A stretch of DNA of 63,515 bases, counting the filler, from Platydemus manokwari (Eukaryota), in assembly GCA_037951405.1 (NCBI GenBank). It is 6 parts of 6 records of this genome, joined end to end, with 100 filler letters (N's around TTAATTAATTAA, not from the genome) between each part and the next. Parts side by side here need not be neighbours in the genome. Positions count along the whole stretch, not along the records: positions 1 to 11,839 come from JBBMOY010438888.1; 5 more parts are not named here. The stretch is one strand, 5' to 3'. The notes under the pieces are model-generated. The model did not search any database. It saw nothing but the letters and a program-made list of their open reading frames with translations, and was not told the origin of the DNA. Numbering within the stretch: position 1 is the first letter of the stretch; the number at the start of each line of letters is the position of its first letter. Positions 434-11,839 of this stretch are shown here, in pieces. A program made the translations under genes and the position numbers.

Positions 434-2524
434 TTTAGTGGCATGTTTTGCTATTGATTAATATTTATAACCATATATTAATATTAATATTTTAATAATA
501 GAATTTGGTGGATCTATCGTTTTTATTTTTTTATTTATAGATGCACACACGCACATCATTAACGATTTACAAGGAAAATTAGATCCTTAAAATATTATAT
601 AAATCGATAAAAACCGAAATTCGCCCAAGTCAGTCAGTTAATCAAACCATGTATTTTATTATGAAATGAAGATATTTCAATATTTATATCACTATATCTG
701 GCATTAAACATATATGTAATGTTATATAATTCATTTAGCAGACACTACAAATATAAAATTCATAAAAATTCATTATTGAAGCTCTTTTTGATTGGTTGGA
801 TTTTATTTGTATTCACTTGATAAAATATGAGACAATCCTTATGAGATAATTGATGAATTAATAATGATTTTAGATGTGTTGTTGTAGTAGTCGTGATGAT
901 GGGTGATGAGAGGTTTTGGTAAGGATGGATCTGTAATTAACTGTTATGTTAATTTTTCTGGATAGATCTTTATTGGCTGTGCAATCAAACATTGATTGAT
1001 ATATTGGAGAAACAGTTGAAAATTATTGGAAATAATTGCTTTAATTTCGTCAAAATTCAATCCCCATATTGGTGATTTAATGGCATGCCTATTTTCTATA
1101 ATTGCGTTCTACAATAATAATGTCTTATAAATAGGACAAATACACTGTTAAAGTGAAGTCGTATATATCGATTAATTGGTGTGTTTGTGGTATTTAAATA
1201 TTCCTATATGCTATAATTGTGTTTTCTGTGAACAAAAGGAAATGTGGACAATAAAATGAACTCTTATATATGAGGAATTGAAAAATAGAACTTAATATAA
1301 AATATTTAAAAATGAATATCATTTAGATATTATTATTATTATGACAACTAGTTATTGTGATCTTTTCAAGCCATATATGATATTGTGATGTACTGTATAT
1401 CATGACAGCCCATGTTATTGATTGAGAAAAATAATTGAGAATGTTGATCGATTAGATGATGTTTGTGGACAGAAAAATTACTCATTTCTATTCATTTCAC
1501 CAATCATCTTCATTTGATAAATTATCATAGTTTTATTGAATATAAGATATAGGAATCGTTATAATTATTTTTGAGATTATTTCGGCTCATCCATAAATCA
1601 AGCATAGACTGTGATATGGATGCGATTGTTCCTCGGTTCATTGAATCTTTATCATTCTTATTTGTGGAAATTTCCATGCATCATATAATTGAATATGGAT
1701 AACTCAAATCCTAAACCACTCCAATATAAGTTCATAATTTGTTTCATTAATAATAATAGTTAAAATCGAATATATTATAACATGCGCCATTTAGAATTTA
1801 TCCTCTAAAATCGGATTCATTTTTAATTTTTAATAAATTTATGGATATAGTTCGAATGATTAAGATGTGGTTAATAAATCATCCCTTACAAATTAACGGC
1901 TCTTCAATACTCGAAGCGTGGCTGGTGATTTTAATTTAAAATTATGCTACCACATTCTACTTGTGACATACCTTAGATTTTATGTGCGCACAGGAATAAT
2001 TATTTTACATGATAAAACTTAATAAATCCCATTCCATTACCCTCCGGGATTGCAGATTTTTCTGTGAAATGAAATATATATATGTGTGTGTGTGTATGTG
2101 TGTGTGTGTGTTAATAAAGAAAAGATGTGATTTGTTAGAATGAGATAATTTTGTATTTTCCACCAATCTTATATTTAAAATAATCTAATGATTCTTGTAT
2201 CTCGTTAGATGTACTTTTAATTTTTCGGCTTATTAATGCATACATAAAAACATTTTAAGATTAGTTTGGAGTCGTTTTATTTTTCAAGACTCCCCACTCT
2301 TTCATATCTATTATTGATAATTCTTGTATTGATTAAAATCATGCATGTATGGTAGCGATTTTTTAAATCCTGTAGTTAACAACAAATTTTACCCTGGTAG
2401 CCTGTCCATTACGCTTGTTATTGTATTATGTTGCTTATTTTAGATTGAATAATTATATCGATGACTATTTTAGGAATATTAATGATAGATATTGTTTTTG
2501 TTATATTATGGTTAAATCATTCAG

Positions 2525-5358
2525 TTATGTTCACCCGATCCATTACTGTTAATGATCAATGTGTCGATCAATGTCGTGAATTGGCTAACAGTAACAAATC
2601 AACTGACGGAAGTAGCAATACTGATCATAAAGACAGAAAACAGATCAATTTAAAACAATCGATTTATGAATTGGAAAAACAACTCAATGAAAAACGACGT
2701 CTGAACAATTTGATGGGTTTCGTTCGCGATTCCAATAGTTACAATACCAGTTCATGTTATATTAAGAAAGCACCTTTCCAATGGATTAAAAAGGGATTAA
2801 TTGGTCAAGGTATTTGACATCATGAATGATATATATATGATGATCATGATTCAATATAATATAAAGGACATGCTGGAAAAGTATATAAGGTTTGTAATCT
2901 GGATACCATGGAAATAATGGCAATGAAAGAAATTGTTATCAATGAACCGTTCTCTCAAGATCTAATCGAATGTGATTTGCTATGCAAATTGTCAAATCCA
3001 TCACTGTTGAAATATTATGGTGCGGATATCAGTCTGAGTCACATGCGTATTTTTACCGAATATTGTGAGAGTGGATCCTTGTCACAAGTATCAATTTTAG
3101 ATATTCCAGAAATCAATTTAAGGCAGTGGACTAAGCAAGTTTTAGAAGCCATCGTCCATTTACATAATCATGTAAATATTATTTTAATATTAATTATAAT
3201 AATTATTATAATTATGATTCATGTTAGCTTTATATGAAAGTTTCAATGATTGAACCAATAATAATATTAGCAGGTAGTGCACCAATAATCGGTGTTGTAG
3301 TTTTTTCTATTCATCAGTAGTATTTATTAATATCTTGAATAGCACACCGAATCCGCAATTTAATATTTCTTTCATTGGTTGATTCGAATATCTGGTCATT
3401 TCACACACCATTTACTGTCATTCACTGCTCACTAATAGACATGTGTTGAAATTGCATTTCGATTTTATATCGTCAAGCATATCCAATACAATTATTATTA
3501 TTATTATTATTTTCAATATTGATTTCGTTTTATTATTTGTTTTCGAAACATTTTACTTCTATTAAATCAATCCAGAATATTGTTCATCGCGATGTAAAGC
3601 CGGATAATATATTCTTGAAAAACATAGAAGATACCAATGAATGTCATGCAAAACTCGGCGATTTCGGAGTTGCTAAATGTCTTGATAATCAGGAAGGACT
3701 ACGAGATATAAAGGGTACTGTGATGTACATGGCTCCTGAGGTATGTTTTTAATAATAATGATTGTTATTATTGTTATCATAACACCGATCAAATCAAGAG
3801 ACATATATATAATGTACAATAACGCAGTGGGCTACAGCCAATGTTCTGCACCCAGGGGATCCTCGAGGGTAGACTATGGGTGTCTTGATCTACCTGTGTA
3901 CAGCATGTTTTCAGTTAGACAAAAAACAGAACAAAAATTGTATCTCCAATAGTTTTTCTGCACGATAACATGGTTTTCCTTTAAAAAACCATTTTAAGTT
4001 ACTTGTTTTACGTTCATAGAAATGTATAACCGCACTAACGTTATAAAGGCTGTTGTCATTCATGCTATTATTAACGAGAATGTTCTTCACCTATAGAGAT
4101 GTCCATTAAGAATTTCAACATATTTACAAGTGTTACTCATGTATAATTTTAAGGATAAGATGAATGATATGGAGTTACTTGACGAGTTGCATGTTTGTAA
4201 ATAGTTCCATACGTATAAAAATAGCAGAAAAACATTATTCTGACATAGTAACAATAGCTTACAATAAAATATATTTTTAATCCACTTCATCAAATTGATA
4301 CCAAATATTTATCATTGGATACCAATTAACCAATACCATCACTAATATTAGAACGTACTAATTTGCTATATATTTACAAAATATTATGTTTTTTTTATTT
4401 TTAATTATTTATTTATTATACTTACAAGTACATGATTTTATATTAGCATCAATAAATAGTCCCATCTTATCAATGCAACTTGTTCTTGGTGGGCTTGTTC
4501 ACCTCATGATTCCCATTTGACCTTAAATAATTCTTAATCACCTTTATTACACCACATTTTTCAAAGTATCGCTTATCTTTATCTATAATATTGACATGAT
4601 AATAATTTGACCTTTCAGTATTATGTAAGAAAGTACGTCATTTAAATCTGACTTACCTTTTTTGTTTTAATCAATCCATTATGATATACTAGATTCCCAG
4701 TATTCATAATAGAAAACGGATGGATTTCACTTATCGAATTACTACTCGTGATAGTTTCTCGTCATTTTATGGTTGATTTTCCTCAATATTTAGCAATTAT
4801 AATTTATTTTATAATAAAATATATTATAGATTATGGTTTATAATATATGTCTGTGTGTTAGACTCTGATATTTGGTGGAAATATTTATCGTATTAAAATA
4901 AATTTGATAACATTTTTGCCTTTTATATCACTGTTTTATAAATGTGTGTGCGTGTGTTTAAAAAATCGATTCCAATTTATAATTATTTCAGGTTGTTGTT
5001 GTGGACAGTGAACGAAATAAATCGAAACCTGGTTACAATCATAAAGTGGACATTTGGTCGCTAGGATGCTTGGTTCTGTATATGATTACCGGAAAACATC
5101 CGTGGGATGAGAATCATCAATTGACAATTTATTATAATGTGATTATTTTATAGAGCGAGAGTGAATGATAATTTTTATTAATGATTTTTCCAGTTGGGAT
5201 TAAAGAAATTACCCTTCATTCCTGATGTTGGTTCAACTGCCAGAATGACAAAAGAAGCCAGAGATTTTATTATTGATTGTCTGAACGTCGATCCCGATGA
5301 GAGGCCGAAAAGCATGGATTTGTTGACTCACAATTTTGTAAAATTACGCAATCTCTAG
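2525..5358 (+). CDS. MAP3K4: MAP kinase kinase kinase 4 (MEKK4/MAP3K4)-like kinase, 3' exons ~2525-2809, 2867-3171, 3576-3740, 4992-5138, 5194-5358; further 5' exons probably lie in ~590-2300 but were not resolved
   Basis: GT-AG splicing gives a continuous frame: ...KKAPFQWIKKGLIGQG|HAGKVYKVCNLDTMEIMAMKEI...IFTEYCESGSL...HLHNH|NIVHRDVKPDNIFL...KLGDFG...GTVMYMAPE|...KVDIWSLGCLVLYMITGKHPW...|...CLNVDPDERP...HNFVKLRNL*. All kinase subdomains are present. The pre-kinase segment (ELEKQLNEKRRLNNLMGFV...FQW...IGQG, MAMKEI) matches MEKK4 as I recall it. Confidence 0.85.
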
Positions 5359-5666
5359 GCAACTGATCCTTTCATATGGGCCTTGTCTATTTTGTTTTTA
5401 GATTTTATCATTTTATTATATTTTAGCCCTTTATTTATCGATATTTGCAATTTGTATAGATTTTTAAGTTGAAATTTTTGTTGTAAATATGGATTATTTT
5501 TCTAACGATTTGATGATTTTTCTTTTCACTCTTCCTCATTTTAGCTAAATGTGTAAATAAATTTCGATAATAAAATATTTCTGAAGATCTTCGATTTTGG
5601 TTATTTGATTTCAATGTTCGATTTTATTGTAAATCGTCATTCATCCATAATTCGAAAAATTTCAAT

Positions 5667-5720
5667 CACACGCACACACATATATATATATATGTGTGTG
5701 TGTGTGTGAGAGAGAGAGAG
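5667..5720. repeat. Compound microsatellite (CA)n(TA)n(TG)n(AG)n
   Basis: Directly visible; a similar (TA)n(TG)n tract lies at 2074-2110. Confidence 0.9.
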
Positions 5721-8700
5721 CATTTTAGATTGAATTAAAATTTTCAAAGATTAAATTGTGTATAAAATCAAATTAATTAAAATAAATTAATATTAAATTA
5801 ATTAAATAAAATCAAATTAATGATTGTATTTAAATATAATTTGATGTCGTGACTTTTTAGTTTGTTTTTGATGAGTGTTTTATAAAATGGTAGTGGCTTA
5901 CATATTAATTGATATACTATTTTATATATTTTAAATTAAGTTATCAATATAATCGAAAATATTATCAGAAATTCTGATGTGTTCAGTAATACGTGTGAAT
6001 TTTCTCATATTTTATTATTCCATTCAGTAAAATAAATCTGACCAATTACAAGTCATTAAAAAAACTATGAATTGTGTATTTGTTATATCTACTTCTAACT
6101 TCTCTTTCCGTTAATTTTTGAAGTCATTCAGCCATGCTTCGGTTTCAGCCAATGTCTCGCTGTTTTGAAAATTCTATAATTCCATAATACTTCTATATCT
6201 ACTGCGTCACGAACTAACACATAACATTATCTTCATCTAATATCCGCATCACATTATATCTATTCATTTTATTTATCAATCACCCTGAAGAGATAGCCGC
6301 GTTATGTTTGGACATTTTATCATAATCATTAGTAAATTCCTCTTTTCAATTAACGAATACATTGTTGGGAATGAATTTCCATCCTTAAAACTCCATGCAA
6401 CAACTAAAAGCTCTGAAAAATTCATCCAAATTACTTTTAAATATTATTTCCATTAAAAATAATTCATAATAATTTATCAGTATATTCTACATAGCAAAGC
6501 TTTTCAAGAGGTCCATTTTTCGACAGTCGTCCATTTTTTCAAAAAAGTCGCTAAGTGCAAACAATTTGTGTATTGTAGCACAATATAAATAAAACTACGA
6601 GATTATTTTTCTACAAGATCAAATTTTGTTTTCAAATAAATAGATCGAACTCATCTGTTAGGTTAATTGACAGCACCATGCGAGATGTTCAACACGCAAT
6701 GGTGTTGTAAAAAATGTCACTTTAAAATATCCAATAATTTTTAAAAAATTCTTATTCGAAATAATCTATAAGAAAATTAATCTAATTCGTGGTTTTCTCT
6801 TCTTTCTCATTTTCTCAGTTTAAATCGAATAAATCGAATTTTAACAAAATTTTAGCCATGGCGGTTAATATTTTAAAGAATCATTCAATAAGACATTTGA
6901 TTGGATGTAGGAATATTTAATTAAATTTTCAATAAATTTTCGATATGCTAACAGCTAATCAATTATGAAGTAAATACTCGTTGTTATTTTTTGCAATAGC
7001 GGAACAGTATCGATTAAATTCACTTAATTATCAAAATTTTCTTTAAAGAGAAACCAATGTATTCATTAAATTATCATAGATTGTTTAATATTTTAGTTTT
7101 GTTTCTTTCGTTTAGCTCACTTGTCGCTACTATAAAATCATCTTCTCTCTGCGTTCATGTATGGTTTTATAGTAAATATCCTGGATTTTTATCTTTTTCT
7201 TAGGAATGGATTATTAAAATTTACTCTTATTATGAATCTAACAATAAGTGCTAAAATATTAGTAGAAAACATTTAACGTGACCCTTAATGTTGACTGTAT
7301 CTTGTTCCTTTGATTTTCAGAGAGTTATGTATTTCCAGTCTCGGTAAACATAACCACGTTTACTGTACCCGAAGTATGTTCAATTTTTTGAGATGATATA
7401 TATATATATATATATATATGCGTTTAAGAGTTGCAGAAATAGAGTTGTTTTGCGATTTTCGAGTATTTTGTCAGGCTTCCTCAGAAATAATTATAACATT
7501 TTGCTCCTATCATCCTTAATTATCCATGCTTCCTAACATCTGTAGCCGGTAGGTATTTAGTTTCCACTTCTAATCTTGTAGCACGATTGGAAATCCTTGG
7601 TTTGTTTTACTAATATTTAGTTTTTTTCGCTAGAAAACTGATATTTCTGCATAAGAATCACTAATTGCGTATCCCTGTCTATTTGGAGAAATATTTTGCA
7701 ATTTCTTTGATAGTTCTCTTCTTTCATAAGTCATTAAAAATTCTTATATTCTTTTCTCAAAGCTTTGGTTTTTCTTCAGGTTTTTGTATTATGGATAATA
7801 GATTCTGGATTTTGTTGTCTAGCAGCTTACGTATTTGCCGGTGTCTCAGAAACCCATTTGTCAATATCTCCATTTGATATCGAGGTGATTTTAGTTAAAA
7901 AAAAATTCAACAAACATAAAAATATCTTTCTATTCTAAAGAATTATATTTTACTAACGTATCGAATTAATTTTATCGTCCAAAAATTATTCTACCTCGAG
8001 TTTCTAATCACTCATTGCTGAATGTATTATTGGGTTAGTGCGCAATTTAGAGAGAGATAACGCAGGCCAGCTTATTTATAATTCTTGGGGAAATTTAACG
8101 ATAATTTTGTGTAATTTTAATCTTTTCGGGCAAATCAAAATACAACAATGGAGGAAATAAATTATTGTTTGGAATAATCAACAATATGCAGTAAATATTG
8201 AATCCTCAAATTGGAGATTATTCATATTATATATATATACAGATATATTTAAGGTAACTTGGATAATTCAACTGCTCATGTATGGTACTTTGTAGATTCC
8301 TCTTTGTGTTTTTTTGAAAGATAAAGCTATCACTGCTTAACCCGACCACAAACTCAAAGCTTGCTTAATTATTGAGGTTGGTGATCAACGGTTCATCCTT
8401 AATTACATGTTTGAGGATTTATAATAAATTGAAATTTGAAAAACTTTTCTATCAAATTTTTATATTTATTTGTGCGAATAATTGTAATTAAAATATAATT
8501 TGGTGTCGTGATTTCTCAGTTCGTTTACAATGCCCGCTTTATAAAATACTACTTACAATCTGAACAACCAATCGACTATTTTATCATATACCTTGTGATC
8601 CAATTTAACCGTTACACTTGAAACATTTTATATTATACCGGCTGTTGTGAATTAAACTAACATCGATTACCCTTTAGTGCCAATGTATAAAACTGATATG

Positions 8701-9664: not shown

Positions 9665-10627
9665 ATGTTATCATTTCATTTATGTTTTATCCTTTATTAT
9701 TTTGTGAGATCTGAAATGAATATTTTCATCAAGACAACTACATGGGTTGGTGATCCCATTAGAGTGATGAATGATGTTGGAGTTATCGAATGTGGTTGTT
9801 TATGCGTCAATATGAAATGTTTTGGATTTGTGTTCGATATTAATCAATGCTTTATTTATCCACGATTTGATCATTGCGATGATATTTTAGAAATCAATAT
9901 TATAAATATATATGTGATCGATACAGAGATGAAACAAGTACGATTGCTTTTCATATTCCTTCTTGACATATATAGCTGTAATTTCTGATTCATGTTTGAT
10001 GCTTTCACTGAATGAATTTTATTTTAGCTGAACGTCTTACAACAGTCGGTTCGATTTAATATCCTAAGAAATGTAAAATCAATTTATTATAATCCATATG
10101 CATCCGGCTTATTATCGATTAATAGTAACCCGACTCAACCAATCATCAATTCGCATAATGGATATACGTCTGTCATGAGTGGAACATATAAAAATGGAAG
10201 AGCGTTGGCATTTTATAAAGAAGAATGCGCGAATCACTTTTTGAGAAACAATTACAAAACATGGGATAAAAACATATTTAATAATATAGCCAAATGGCTA
10301 ACCAATGATGCTTGTGTGAATCTGACCACCTGTTTGATCCCTGTCAATGAATACAGAAACAATTTACACCGCCGGAATTTGGTGGTGGTATATCCTCAGA
10401 ATATAAACATCGATTCCAGTGAACCGATTTTAAATGAGAAAATACAATCGGGAAATTGGGGCATGATTTTTTCTGGCACTTATTGGACTTTTAGTTCACC
10501 GGGGCAAAAATATCTGTTGAATAAATTCGGTATTTGTTCCACTAAATTTTATGGGAAAATCGATTCGTCTACAGATTTGAATTGGTGCAAAAATATTTCT
10601 GATATAAAAATTCTGACATGCAGATAA
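9665..10627 (+). CDS. Secreted protein, ~290 aa: signal peptide + PAN/apple-like domain + TCAF/FAM115 N-terminal-like domain (exons 9665-9937, 10028-10627)
   Basis: Hydrophobic N-terminus; PAN-type Cys pattern ECGCLCVNMKCFGFVFDINQCFIY; a phase-0 GT-AG intron 9938-10027 joins the two ORFs in frame; C-terminal motifs SGTYKNGRALAF, IFNNIAKWL, SGNWGMIFSGTYW, LLNKFGI. Clear paralogue at 62144-63098. Confidence 0.8.
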
Positions 10628-11839
10628 TATGATTCCATCGATCACTGGGTTCTTTACGTTTGAAAGATTCTACTTCCAAGCAAATATTTATCCCCAAAAT
10701 ACAGCATCAAGCTTGTTATTTGTTTTTATTGTATTTGCTATTCGAAATATTAACAAGATAATATTTAGAAAATCACAACGGCTTATCGAGGACAATACTT
10801 GTTTTCATTTACAGTGAGCCCCAATCTTTATCGGATATTATAATTAATTAATTAATTAGCTGAATTTAGAATTATTTTATTTCATCAAGCTCCAGCTATT
10901 AATTAATGATGAATAAAAGTTTTCAGACGAATATCGGGGGTTTAAAAAATTTCAATAACTACTGATGGAACTTAATTGATTTTAATAGATTTTGATCAAC
11001 AAGATATTCCCGATGAATCAAACTGTTAATAATGTATGAGCACTTACAGGTTGATAATTGATGCTTCTGTCAAAAATCTGACAACTAACAGAGATTTAAA
11101 TGTGTATTATTAATAAAAATAAGTAACTATAAACAATATAATAGATATATTAAATATAATGACCATTAACGTGTAATGCGTAACGCTAACTGAATGCCGT
11201 AAAATGAGCTCAAGAATGAAAAAATCGATGGAAAGAACTAAGTGGTGCCCTTCTTCGATGTAAAACTAAGAAAATTTTTTATTTTATTAGCCAATAAATT
11301 CAATTAGGCTTTGTTGGATGGATTTATTTGATTTTCCACGACGAACCTTCTGCCGGAGATCGGAGCGAATAAACTAGCAACGATAATAATAATGTCTGCT
11401 ATATTTCAATATAAAGTCGAATTGAATTCGAAACAATAACGGAATGATTTTGCTTGGGAATGCTTGTTGGATTGAAAATCCTGGATGAACGCTGTAAGAA
11501 ATCTGTAAGGGAATTTTGCGCGATTTGATTGCCAAATCAGTGGGTTTAATTTACATTTTTGATTGTGAGGTTTTGTGAGATTTATTAATCATTTAATATT
11601 TTCTATTAGTAATTTCCCACGTTGCCATGGTGATTTGCATTTTAAATTTTAATTAATCAAGGTGAATAATTCATTATAATTATTGTCACCCAAAATATGA
11701 TTTTATTTTTACATTTATAATTATTTATAATCATGTGTATCATTTATATATAATTACTGTACATATTAGGCTGAGTCAAAAGTTATTCATGTTTTTTAGT
11801 TGTTTAAAGTTTTTGTTTTACCAAATCATTTAAACATAA

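What the first reader, a model, noticed from the sequence alone, without database searches (positions are those of the whole stretch)
9665..10627. Secreted PAN/apple + TCAF-N-like protein: candidate undescribed family
Seen: an intact two-exon gene with signal peptide, PAN-type Cys module and a ~200-aa C-terminal domain, plus a paralogue on another contig. Inference: the C-terminal domain (RFNILRNVKSI...PIINSHNGYTSVMSGTYKNGRALAFYKEE...IFNNIAKWL...SGNWGMIFSGTYW...LLNKFGI) aligns by eye with the N-terminal repeat of TCAF/FAM115 proteins (recalled motifs: AASxYGRGRxVVxSHE, FLLNAVxWL, GGGLLIGGQAW). In TCAFs that repeat precedes an M60 metallopeptidase. Here it stands alone, gains extra cysteines and is fused to an extracellular binding module. 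I know of no described family with this architecture; it could be a lineage-specific mucus, defence or adhesion protein.
Basis: partly seen in the sequence, partly recalled or inferred. Interest (0 to 1): 0.75.

Follow-up and report, generated by a model that had tools for sequence, protein, structure and literature searches.

The report
Secreted PAN plus TCAF-N/IMPa-N protein
An intact two-exon gene encodes a small secreted protein that joins a PAN/apple binding module to a single copy of the accessory domain that normally sits in front of M60 mucin-cutting peptidases (TCAF, IMPa), here without any peptidase, so it is most likely a non-enzymatic extracellular binding protein of an unannotated family.

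Summary
Exon 1 (9665-9937) and exon 2 (10028-10627) are joined by a 90-nt GT..AG phase-0 intron and give a 290-aa product. A 291-aa database protein (P0004) runs without a gap across the same junction. Four other loci carry an intron or acceptor at the same codon.

Exon 1 is a signal-peptide-like leader plus a PAN/apple module. A six-sequence profile hits only PAN/apple structures at E below 0.5 (MIC4, HGF N domain, at 3e-5).

Exon 2 is one approximately 199-aa domain.
- An exhaustive profile search of 1.84 billion proteins reached Branchiostoma TCAF2-like (5.9e-5) and other M60-linked repeats.
- hhalign against those repeats gave 97.3% probability (E 2.4e-11, 162 columns).
- An AlphaFold model (pLDDT 94.6) matches only the IMPa N-terminal domain (Z 13.4; next best 3.0).

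Similarity to class-I GATase folds is weak and partial, and there is no catalytic triad and no HExxH.

The family is small (about 20 representatives), unnamed and known only from environmental or unannotated sequence.

The likely function, binding of glycoproteins or glycopeptides outside the cell, is inferred and not shown. No RNA evidence was available. I rate it a new architecture built from known domains, of moderate interest.

The parts
9665..9937 (+). Exon 1 (91 codons): leader plus PAN/apple module. It ends in phase 0 before the GT donor at 9938.
   Evidence: It aligns to P0004 residues 1-92.
9665..9712 (+). Signal-peptide-like leader (residues 1-16, MLSFHLCFILYYFVRS).
   Evidence: Read from the sequence. 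It has a hydrophobic core and V-R-S at positions -3 to -1. Equivalent leaders occur in P0004, P0008, L003, L006 and L007. No predictor was run.
9734..9928 (+). PAN/apple-type module (about residues 24-88). C43, C47, C52, C62 and C71 are invariant.
   Evidence: The profile of 6 exon-1 domains hits MIC4 apple (2.9e-5), the HGF N domain (3e-5), plasminogen and FXI. PAN_1 is found in 5 of 6 members, best E 2.1e-4. The window's own copy gives no hit alone.
9938..10027 (+). Intron, 90 nt, GTACGA...TTATTTTAG, 29% G+C, containing an in-frame stop.
   Evidence: The position is conserved in L001, L002, L003, L006 and L007.
10028..10627 (+). Exon 2 (199 codons plus TAA at 10625-10627).
   Evidence: Homologues P0001 (56% identity), P0004 (49%) and P0003 (47%) end at the same C-terminal cysteine.
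10028..10606 (+). TCAF_N / IMPa_N_2-type alpha/beta domain (exon-2 residues 1-193). Motifs are GTYKNGRALAFYKEE, NIAKWLT and SGNWGMIFSGTYW. Conserved cysteines are C96, C102, C170, C187 and C198. Sequons are NLT98 and NIS189.
   Evidence: Big search. hhalign 97.3%. AF2 pLDDT 94.6. IMPa Foldseek E 4e-7 and VIA Z 13.4 over model 1-193. Cysteine and sequon counts.
10912..10917 (+). AATAAA, a possible polyadenylation signal 285 nt after the stop.
   Evidence: This is a pattern match only, and chance is likely in AT-rich DNA.

Best explanation
The locus is a functional two-exon gene for a 290-aa secreted, disulfide-bonded, non-enzymatic two-module protein. The first module is a PAN/apple domain. The second is one copy of the roughly 200-aa alpha/beta domain that occurs as N-terminal repeats in TCAF proteins and as the N-terminal domain of the Pseudomonas O-glycopeptidase IMPa (Pfam TCAF_N / IMPa_N_2). 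Here it has no M60 peptidase behind it.

Shown: the gene structure, the identity of both domains, and the lack of catalytic motifs.

Inferred: the protein enters the secretory pathway. This rests on the leader, 10 conserved cysteines and conserved N-glycosylation sequons. It then acts outside the cell as a binder or cross-linker of glycoproteins, for example mucin-like O-glycosylated, proline-rich stretches. PAN supplies one protein- or carbohydrate-binding surface. The IMPa_N_2-like domain supplies a second, by analogy with the glycopeptide-binding exosite seen in that domain of IMPa.
For: Gene model and conserved junction.

PAN.

C-terminal domain:
- Library-wide hits to TCAF2-like XP_035697568.1 (5.9e-5), the M60-like protein P0022 (2.5e-4) and the nine-repeat P0015 (6e-6).
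- hhalign 97.3%, E 2.4e-11.
- The reciprocal HMM gives 28.6 bits on the window's exon 2.
- AF2 model with pLDDT 94.6 and pTM 0.91.
- Foldseek finds only IMPa, at E 4e-7, with the next hit at 0.2.
- VIA-align gives Z 13.4, rmsd 3.7 A and 186 of 199 residues on IMPa 75-301, with the next Z at 3.0.

Not an enzyme: no HExxH. The invariant and near-invariant columns are V, W, G, I and disulfide-type cysteines, not a Cys-His-Glu triad.

The protein ends here: the stop follows the last conserved cysteine in all members, and there is no Pfam hit downstream.

Exosite: PMC10550946 states that one IMPa crystal structure has a ligand bound at an exosite in the N-terminal domain (PF18650), citing Noach and Boraston 2021.
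Against: - No RNA run holds the locus, so expression and splicing are unconfirmed.
- The signal peptide was judged by eye only.
- The window's own exon 1 gives no Pfam hit alone.
- No family member reaches a Pfam gathering score for IMPa_N_2 or GATase1_like.
- The profile of the family finds nothing in the PDB by sequence.
- 13 of the 33 rows in the alignment used for the good model were TCAF-like repeats. The family-only three-row alignment gave pLDDT 36.6. The model therefore leans on the homology it is used to support, although hhalign supports that homology independently.
- Ligand binding was not tested. Conservation of the IMPa exosite residues could not be examined because no coordinates were available.
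Confidence: 0.7

Rival explanations
1. The C-terminal domain is an active class-I glutamine-amidotransferase-like (ThuA / DJ-1 / GATase1_like) enzyme, and the protein is a secreted hydrolase.
For: Pfam GATase1_like gives E 0.005 on exon-2 residues 44-92. The TCAF-like repeat profile touches the IFT52 GIFT domain, the GH42 middle domain and STM1381. There are weak structural matches to GATase1-like chains for model residues 7-95 (3rht Z 2.3, 2vdj Z 2.3).
Against: The Pfam score is 16.9 bits against a cut-off of 27, and only the last 50 profile positions are matched. Structural similarity covers only half the domain, at Z about 2, against Z 13.4 for IMPa. There is no conserved nucleophile Cys, His or Glu among the family's conserved columns.
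Confidence: 0.05
2. The gene is silent, decaying or mis-modelled, for example a recent pseudogene or a fragment of a larger TCAF/M60-type gene whose peptidase exons lie elsewhere.
For: No RNA run was found. The contig ends 1.2 kb downstream of the gene.
Against: Both exons are open and the splice sites are canonical. All conserved cysteines and core residues are kept. The model is highly confident. Every relative, including the 291-aa P0004, stops 0-6 residues after the same last cysteine. Nothing downstream (10629-10814) or upstream matches M60. The same SP-PAN | intron | domain layout recurs in five other loci.
Confidence: 0.1
3. The protein is secreted and non-enzymatic, but its targets are microbes or other foreign surfaces (an immune pattern-recognition or agglutinin role) rather than the animal's own mucus or matrix.
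For: PAN/apple modules are common in recognition and adhesion proteins (established knowledge). The family is diversified into two deep subfamilies, at 18-26% identity to each other, that co-occur in the same samples (ERZ27256860 and SRR33002330). Such diversification is typical of recognition gene families.
Against: There is no direct evidence either way. No expression, induction or binding data exist.
Confidence: 0.15

Closest known systems
IMPa (PA0572) N-terminal domain, Pfam PF18650 IMPa_N_2 (PDB 5KDV, 5KDW, 5KDX, 7JTV)
   Same: The whole-domain fold is the same: Z 13.4, rmsd 3.7 A, 186 residues on chain residues 75-301, and Foldseek probability 1.00. The lengths are similar (199 aa here against a 200-position Pfam model). 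The related repeats of P0015 hit PF18650 at 1.4e-16.
   Different: Identity is 12-14%, and no sequence-level hit runs from this family to IMPa. IMPa is bacterial and carries the domain in front of an M60-type O-glycopeptidase. Here the domain is eukaryotic, stands alone after a PAN module, and has five family-specific cysteines.
TCAF1/TCAF2 (FAM115) N-terminal repeats, Pfam PF27016 TCAF_N
   Same: The motif order is the same (G-x-Y-G-x-G-[RK]-hhh-h... / N-h-x-x-W-L / G-G-x-h-h-h-G-x-x-W / G-I). hhalign gives 97.3% over 162 columns. Branchiostoma TCAF2-like was recovered library-wide at 5.9e-5, with both of its repeats matched.
   Different: TCAFs have two repeats followed by M60-like_N and Peptidase_M60. 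From general knowledge, they lack a signal peptide and act on TRP channels from inside the cell. This protein has one repeat, a leader, a PAN module, disulfide cysteines and no peptidase. The PF27016 model itself was not available to test.
Anneissia japonica LOC117112459 (XP_033111434.1, P0015)
   Same: It is a peptidase-free animal protein made of the same repeat. It has nine tandem units of about 208 aa, each matched by the family profile.
   Different: It is a long tandem array without PAN, and it lacks the family's cysteine pattern.
PAN/apple domains (HGF N domain, plasminogen PAN, factor XI apple, Toxoplasma MIC4)
   Same: The core pattern C-x3-C-x4-C-x-F-x(n)-C-x-Y is shared, and the family profile matches at 3e-5.
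   Different: The module here is divergent. The window's copy is below Pfam detection on its own. It lacks the outer C1-C6 pair that the second subfamily keeps.

Membership tests
PAN/apple (Pfam PAN_1 PF00024) | HMM match at or above the gathering score (21.4 bits) | tested here: not met
   The window's exon 1 has no hit even at E 10. Relatives score 15-16.5 bits, and the best of six has E 2.1e-4.
PAN/apple (Pfam PAN_1 PF00024) | Family profile recognises solved PAN/apple domains and nothing else | tested here: met
   In one search, 20 of 21 PDB matches are PAN/apple: MIC4 (2.9e-5), the HGF N domain (3e-5), plasminogen and FXI.
PAN/apple (Pfam PAN_1 PF00024) | Core cysteine pattern for the two hairpin disulfides | tested here: met
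   C43, C47, C52 and C62 are invariant in all six sequences and aligned to the HGF cysteines. Disulfide bonding itself was not tested.
TCAF_N / IMPa_N_2 domain (PF27016 / PF18650) | Pfam HMM match at the gathering score | tested here: not met
   IMPa_N_2 matches only one family member, at E 0.064. PF27016 is not in the local Pfam copy, so it was not testable.
TCAF_N / IMPa_N_2 domain (PF27016 / PF18650) | Significant profile-level homology to bona fide TCAF/M60-linked repeats over the whole domain | tested here: met
   Library-wide E-values are 5.9e-5, 2.5e-4 and 6e-6. hhalign gives 97.3%, E 2.4e-11, over 162 columns. The reciprocal HMM gives 28.6 bits.
TCAF_N / IMPa_N_2 domain (PF27016 / PF18650) | Same three-dimensional fold as the solved IMPa N-terminal domain | tested here: met
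   The predicted model has pLDDT 94.6. Foldseek gives E 4e-7. VIA gives Z 13.4 with 186 residues aligned, against a next best of 3.0. Caveat: this is a model, not an experimental structure, and the alignment used to build it included TCAF-like rows.
TCAF proteins / M60-like peptidases (whole-protein family) | M60-like_N plus a Peptidase_M60 catalytic domain with HExxH | tested here: not met
   There is no HExxH. The protein ends at the conserved C-terminal cysteine. There is no M60 hit downstream.
Class-I glutamine amidotransferase-like (GATase1_like PF07090, ThuA, GIFT) | HMM match at the gathering score (27 bits) | tested here: not met
   The score is 16.9 bits, E 0.005, on residues 44-92 only, matching profile positions 197-246 of 247.
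Class-I glutamine amidotransferase-like (GATase1_like PF07090, ThuA, GIFT) | Cys-His-Glu catalytic triad at the nucleophile elbow | tested here: not met
   No conserved His or Glu is present, and the conserved cysteines are at disulfide-type positions 96, 102, 170, 187 and 198.
Class-I glutamine amidotransferase-like (GATase1_like PF07090, ThuA, GIFT) | Whole-domain fold match | tested here: inconclusive
   Only model residues 7-95 align, at Z 2.2-2.5 (3rht, 2vdj, 5vym). The related TCAF-like repeat profile touches IFT52 GIFT at 4.9e-4. A distant or permuted relationship is possible.

The most novel reading that the evidence does not exclude
The TCAF_N/IMPa_N_2 domain is an autonomous recognition module for (glyco)peptides. 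On this reading, the family is an animal-encoded, peptidase-free 'reader' of proline-rich O-glycosylated stretches, tethered through PAN. It would organise or cross-link the animal's own mucus, or compete with microbial M60 mucinases for their docking sites. That would give the first functional handle on what TCAF N-terminal repeats bind.
Probability: 0.2. Interest if true: 0.6.

Novelty: new variant of a known kind. Interest (0 to 1): 0.4.

Why it matters
The N-terminal repeats of TCAF proteins, and the matching domain of bacterial O-glycopeptidases, have no established function beyond one crystallographic exosite in IMPa. A natural protein in which a single copy of this domain is cut loose from the peptidase offers a simple system for testing whether the domain binds ligands on its own. 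In this protein the domain is sent outside the cell, stapled with disulfides and fused to a PAN module.

The case also shows that a sizeable gene family of soil or freshwater microfauna is absent from annotated protein sets. It is visible only as exon-sized ORFs in metagenomes. If the binding role is wrong, the finding is still a clean annotation: two known domain types in a new combination.

Tried and rejected
- Single-sequence Pfam and PDB searches on both exons gave only a sub-threshold GATase1_like hit and noise.
- The first AlphaFold run, with a three-row alignment, was useless at pLDDT 36.6.
- Word-index searches found few relatives: 2, then 5, then 2.
- The family profiles A1 and A2 found nothing in the PDB by sequence.
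- The JGI metagenome scan returned one short contig carrying P0002, without exon 1.
- P0004 has no contig on record, so its organism is unknown.
- The run search found only one holder, probably the source DNA, and no RNA.
- A mixed full-length alignment (A5) misplaced the window's exon 1 and was discarded.
- P0019 and P0021 from the big search are short repeated cysteine-rich matches and were judged spurious.
- The papers of Noach et al. 2017 and Noach and Boraston 2021 are not held. The exosite statement is therefore taken second-hand from PMC10550946.
- The BFVD fold search gave one unnamed 983-aa viral protein at 3.3e-4, which was not followed up.
- No tRNA or Rfam match occurs in the piece.

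Full report
**What is in the sequence**

The piece is AT-rich eukaryotic DNA, with 22-35% G+C in 500-nt windows. On the + strand an ATG at 9665 opens a 91-codon stretch. It ends in phase 0 at 9937 in front of GTACGA. Ninety bases later, TTATTTTAG ends at 10027. A 199-codon frame then runs from 10028 to a TAA at 10625-10627. If the intron were read through, the frame would stop at 9988, so splicing is required for the 290-aa product.

By my own arithmetic, about 8% of random codons are stops at this base composition. A 199-codon open frame therefore has a chance probability near 3e-8. Every search used each exon by reference.

**Is the gene model right?**

The exhaustive profile search returned P0004, a 291-aa protein known only as a UniParc/MetaClust entry. 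Its residues 1-92 align with exon 1 and its residues 93-291 with exon 2. The alignment runs straight across the junction...VIDTELDK|LDILQESFRFNILRNV in P0004 against ...VIDTEMKQ|LNVLQQSVRFNILRNV here.

Four further kinds of evidence place an intron at the same codon:
- L001 has TTTTGGTTCAG| in front of the homologous leucine.
- L002 (P0008) reads through a 48-nt GT..AG insert that adds 16 residues exactly there.
- L003, L006 and L007 each have a separate leader-plus-PAN ORF 35-60 nt upstream of the exon-2 ORF.

The model is therefore well supported by comparison. No RNA run holds the locus, so expression is unproven.

**Exon 1**

Residues 1-16 (MLSFHLCFILYYFVRS) look like a signal peptide, as do the leaders of the five homologues. 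This is a judgement from the sequence, because no predictor was available.

The rest of exon 1 carries invariant C43, C47, C52, C62 and C71, plus F55 and Y65. Alone, the window's copy finds nothing in Pfam. However, five of the six family members give PAN_1 as their top hit, with the best at 2.1e-4. A profile of the six finds PAN/apple structures in 20 of its 21 PDB matches:
- Toxoplasma MIC4 at 2.9e-5
- the HGF N domain at 3e-5
- plasminogen
- factor XI

The PAN/apple call is supported at family level.

**Exon 2: relatives**

The word-index search found two exon-sized ORFs on short metagenome contigs, at 56% and 42% identity.

The exhaustive search with their profile found 22 proteins at E up to 1e-3 among 1.84 billion. 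About 17 of these are short unnamed ORFs of the same family. Two more, P0004 and P0008, are full length.

The family splits into a close group at 40-56% identity to the window (P0001-P0005) and a deep group at 18-26%. Members of both groups occur in the same samples.

Five cysteines are conserved: C96, C102, C170, C187 and C198. N-glycosylation sequons recur at residues 98, 129 and 189. Both features fit a secretory protein.

**Exon 2: what domain is it?**

The same search reached three informative distant proteins.

- P0018 is XP_035697568.1, 'TRPM8 channel-associated factor 2-like' of Branchiostoma floridae (E 5.9e-5). It has M60-like_N and Peptidase_M60 domains. The family profile matches both of its N-terminal repeats, at 83-161 and 340-397.
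- P0022 (E 2.5e-4) has M60-like_N and the start of Peptidase_M60. It carries a precomputed weak hit to PF27016 TCAF_N.
- P0015 (E 6e-6) is an uncharacterised 1886-aa protein of the crinoid Anneissia japonica. It has nine tandem units of about 208 aa, all matched by the family profile. It hits IMPa_N_2 at 1.4e-16 and has no peptidase domain.

Profile-profile comparison of 19 family members with 13 such repeats gave 97.3% probability, E 2.4e-11, over 162 aligned columns. The reverse HMM scores 28.6 bits on the window's exon 2.

**Exon 2: structure**

With three rows the model was poor, at pLDDT 36.6. With 33 rows (family plus TCAF-like repeats, window first) it reached pLDDT 94.6 and pTM 0.91, as an alpha/beta domain.

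Foldseek against the PDB found only the Pseudomonas O-glycopeptidase IMPa (5KDX, 5KDW, 7JTV, 5KDV). These matches had E 4e-7 to 2e-6 and probability 1.00, and the next hit was at E 0.2.

VIA-align against 48,161 representative chains gave 5KDV_A at Z 13.4, with rmsd 3.7 A and 186 aligned residues (model 1-193 on chain 75-301). The next best Z was 3.0. That region of IMPa is its N-terminal domain, Pfam PF18650 (PMC10550946).

Caveat: the alignment behind the good model contained the TCAF-like rows, so the fold match is not fully independent of the sequence homology.

**Class-I GATase-like?**

This link is only weak. GATase1_like scores 16.9 bits against a cut-off of 27, on residues 44-92 only. 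GATase-like chains align to model residues 7-95 at Z 2.2-2.5. The TCAF-like repeat profile touches IFT52 GIFT at 4.9e-4, along with the GH42 middle domain and STM1381.

A remote or rearranged relationship is possible. However, no Cys-His-Glu triad is conserved and there is no HExxH. I treat the domain as non-catalytic.

**How it probably works**

Shown: the gene encodes a leader, a PAN module and one TCAF_N/IMPa_N_2-type domain, and nothing else. The protein stops 0-6 residues after the last conserved cysteine in every member. The flanks hold no M60 match.

Inferred: the protein is secreted and disulfide-bonded. Each domain has five conserved cysteines, an odd number, which suggests one interdomain bridge. 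It would then bind extracellular glycoproteins. PAN/apple modules are protein- and carbohydrate-binding modules (established knowledge). [quoted passage not shown]

Whether the targets are the animal's own mucus or matrix, or microbes, is open.

**Comparison and novelty**

Both domain types are curated, so the fold is not new. Peptidase-free arrays of the repeat also exist (P0015).

What I could not find anywhere is the combination of signal peptide, PAN and a single TCAF_N-like domain. No member carries a name or a precomputed Pfam domain. The only full-length entries are P0004 and P0008.

This is a new variant, meaning a new architecture and a divergent subfamily of a known kind.

Noticed in passing
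window 2461-5357 (+): The upstream neighbour is a multi-exon Ser/Thr protein kinase gene. Exons at about 2908-3171, 3576-3740 and 4992-5141 hit Pkinase, with E between 3.8e-8 and 1.6e-14. The motifs HRDVKPDN, DFG, APE and DIWSLGC are present. One intron of about 1.25 kb (3741-4991) interrupts it.
   Followed up: partly
window 2070-2118, 5659-5728, 7396-7444: These are (AT)n/(TG)n/(AG)n microsatellites. They account for most repeat families reported in the piece.
   Followed up: no
window 5828-5888 and 8487-8547: Two 61-nt direct copies, 79% identical and 2.7 kb apart, lie in the ORF-free stretch between the kinase gene and the PAN gene. They may be the ends or remnants of a small mobile element.
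   Followed up: no
L002 427-474: P0008's 311-aa 'protein' contains a 48-nt GT..AG intron that happens to be in frame and stop-free. The database sequence therefore carries 16 spurious residues (VMPFHCHAVYQCLSFQ) between PAN and the C-terminal domain.
   Followed up: yes
L004 4359-9043: On the 45-kb environmental contig that carries the M60-like protein P0022, a TIR-domain ORF lies 1.2 kb upstream. A separate Peptidase_M60 ORF follows P0022, so P0022 is probably a split gene call of one TCAF-like gene.
   Followed up: no
P0015 (XP_033111434.1): This crinoid protein is made of nine tandem TCAF_N/IMPa_N_2-like units of about 208 aa and has no peptidase domain. It is a second peptidase-free use of this domain in animals.
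   Followed up: partly
BFVD A0A811A963: One unnamed 983-aa viral protein matches the model (Foldseek E 3.3e-4, probability 1.00). It may be a viral M60/enhancin-like protein with the same N-terminal domain.
   Followed up: no
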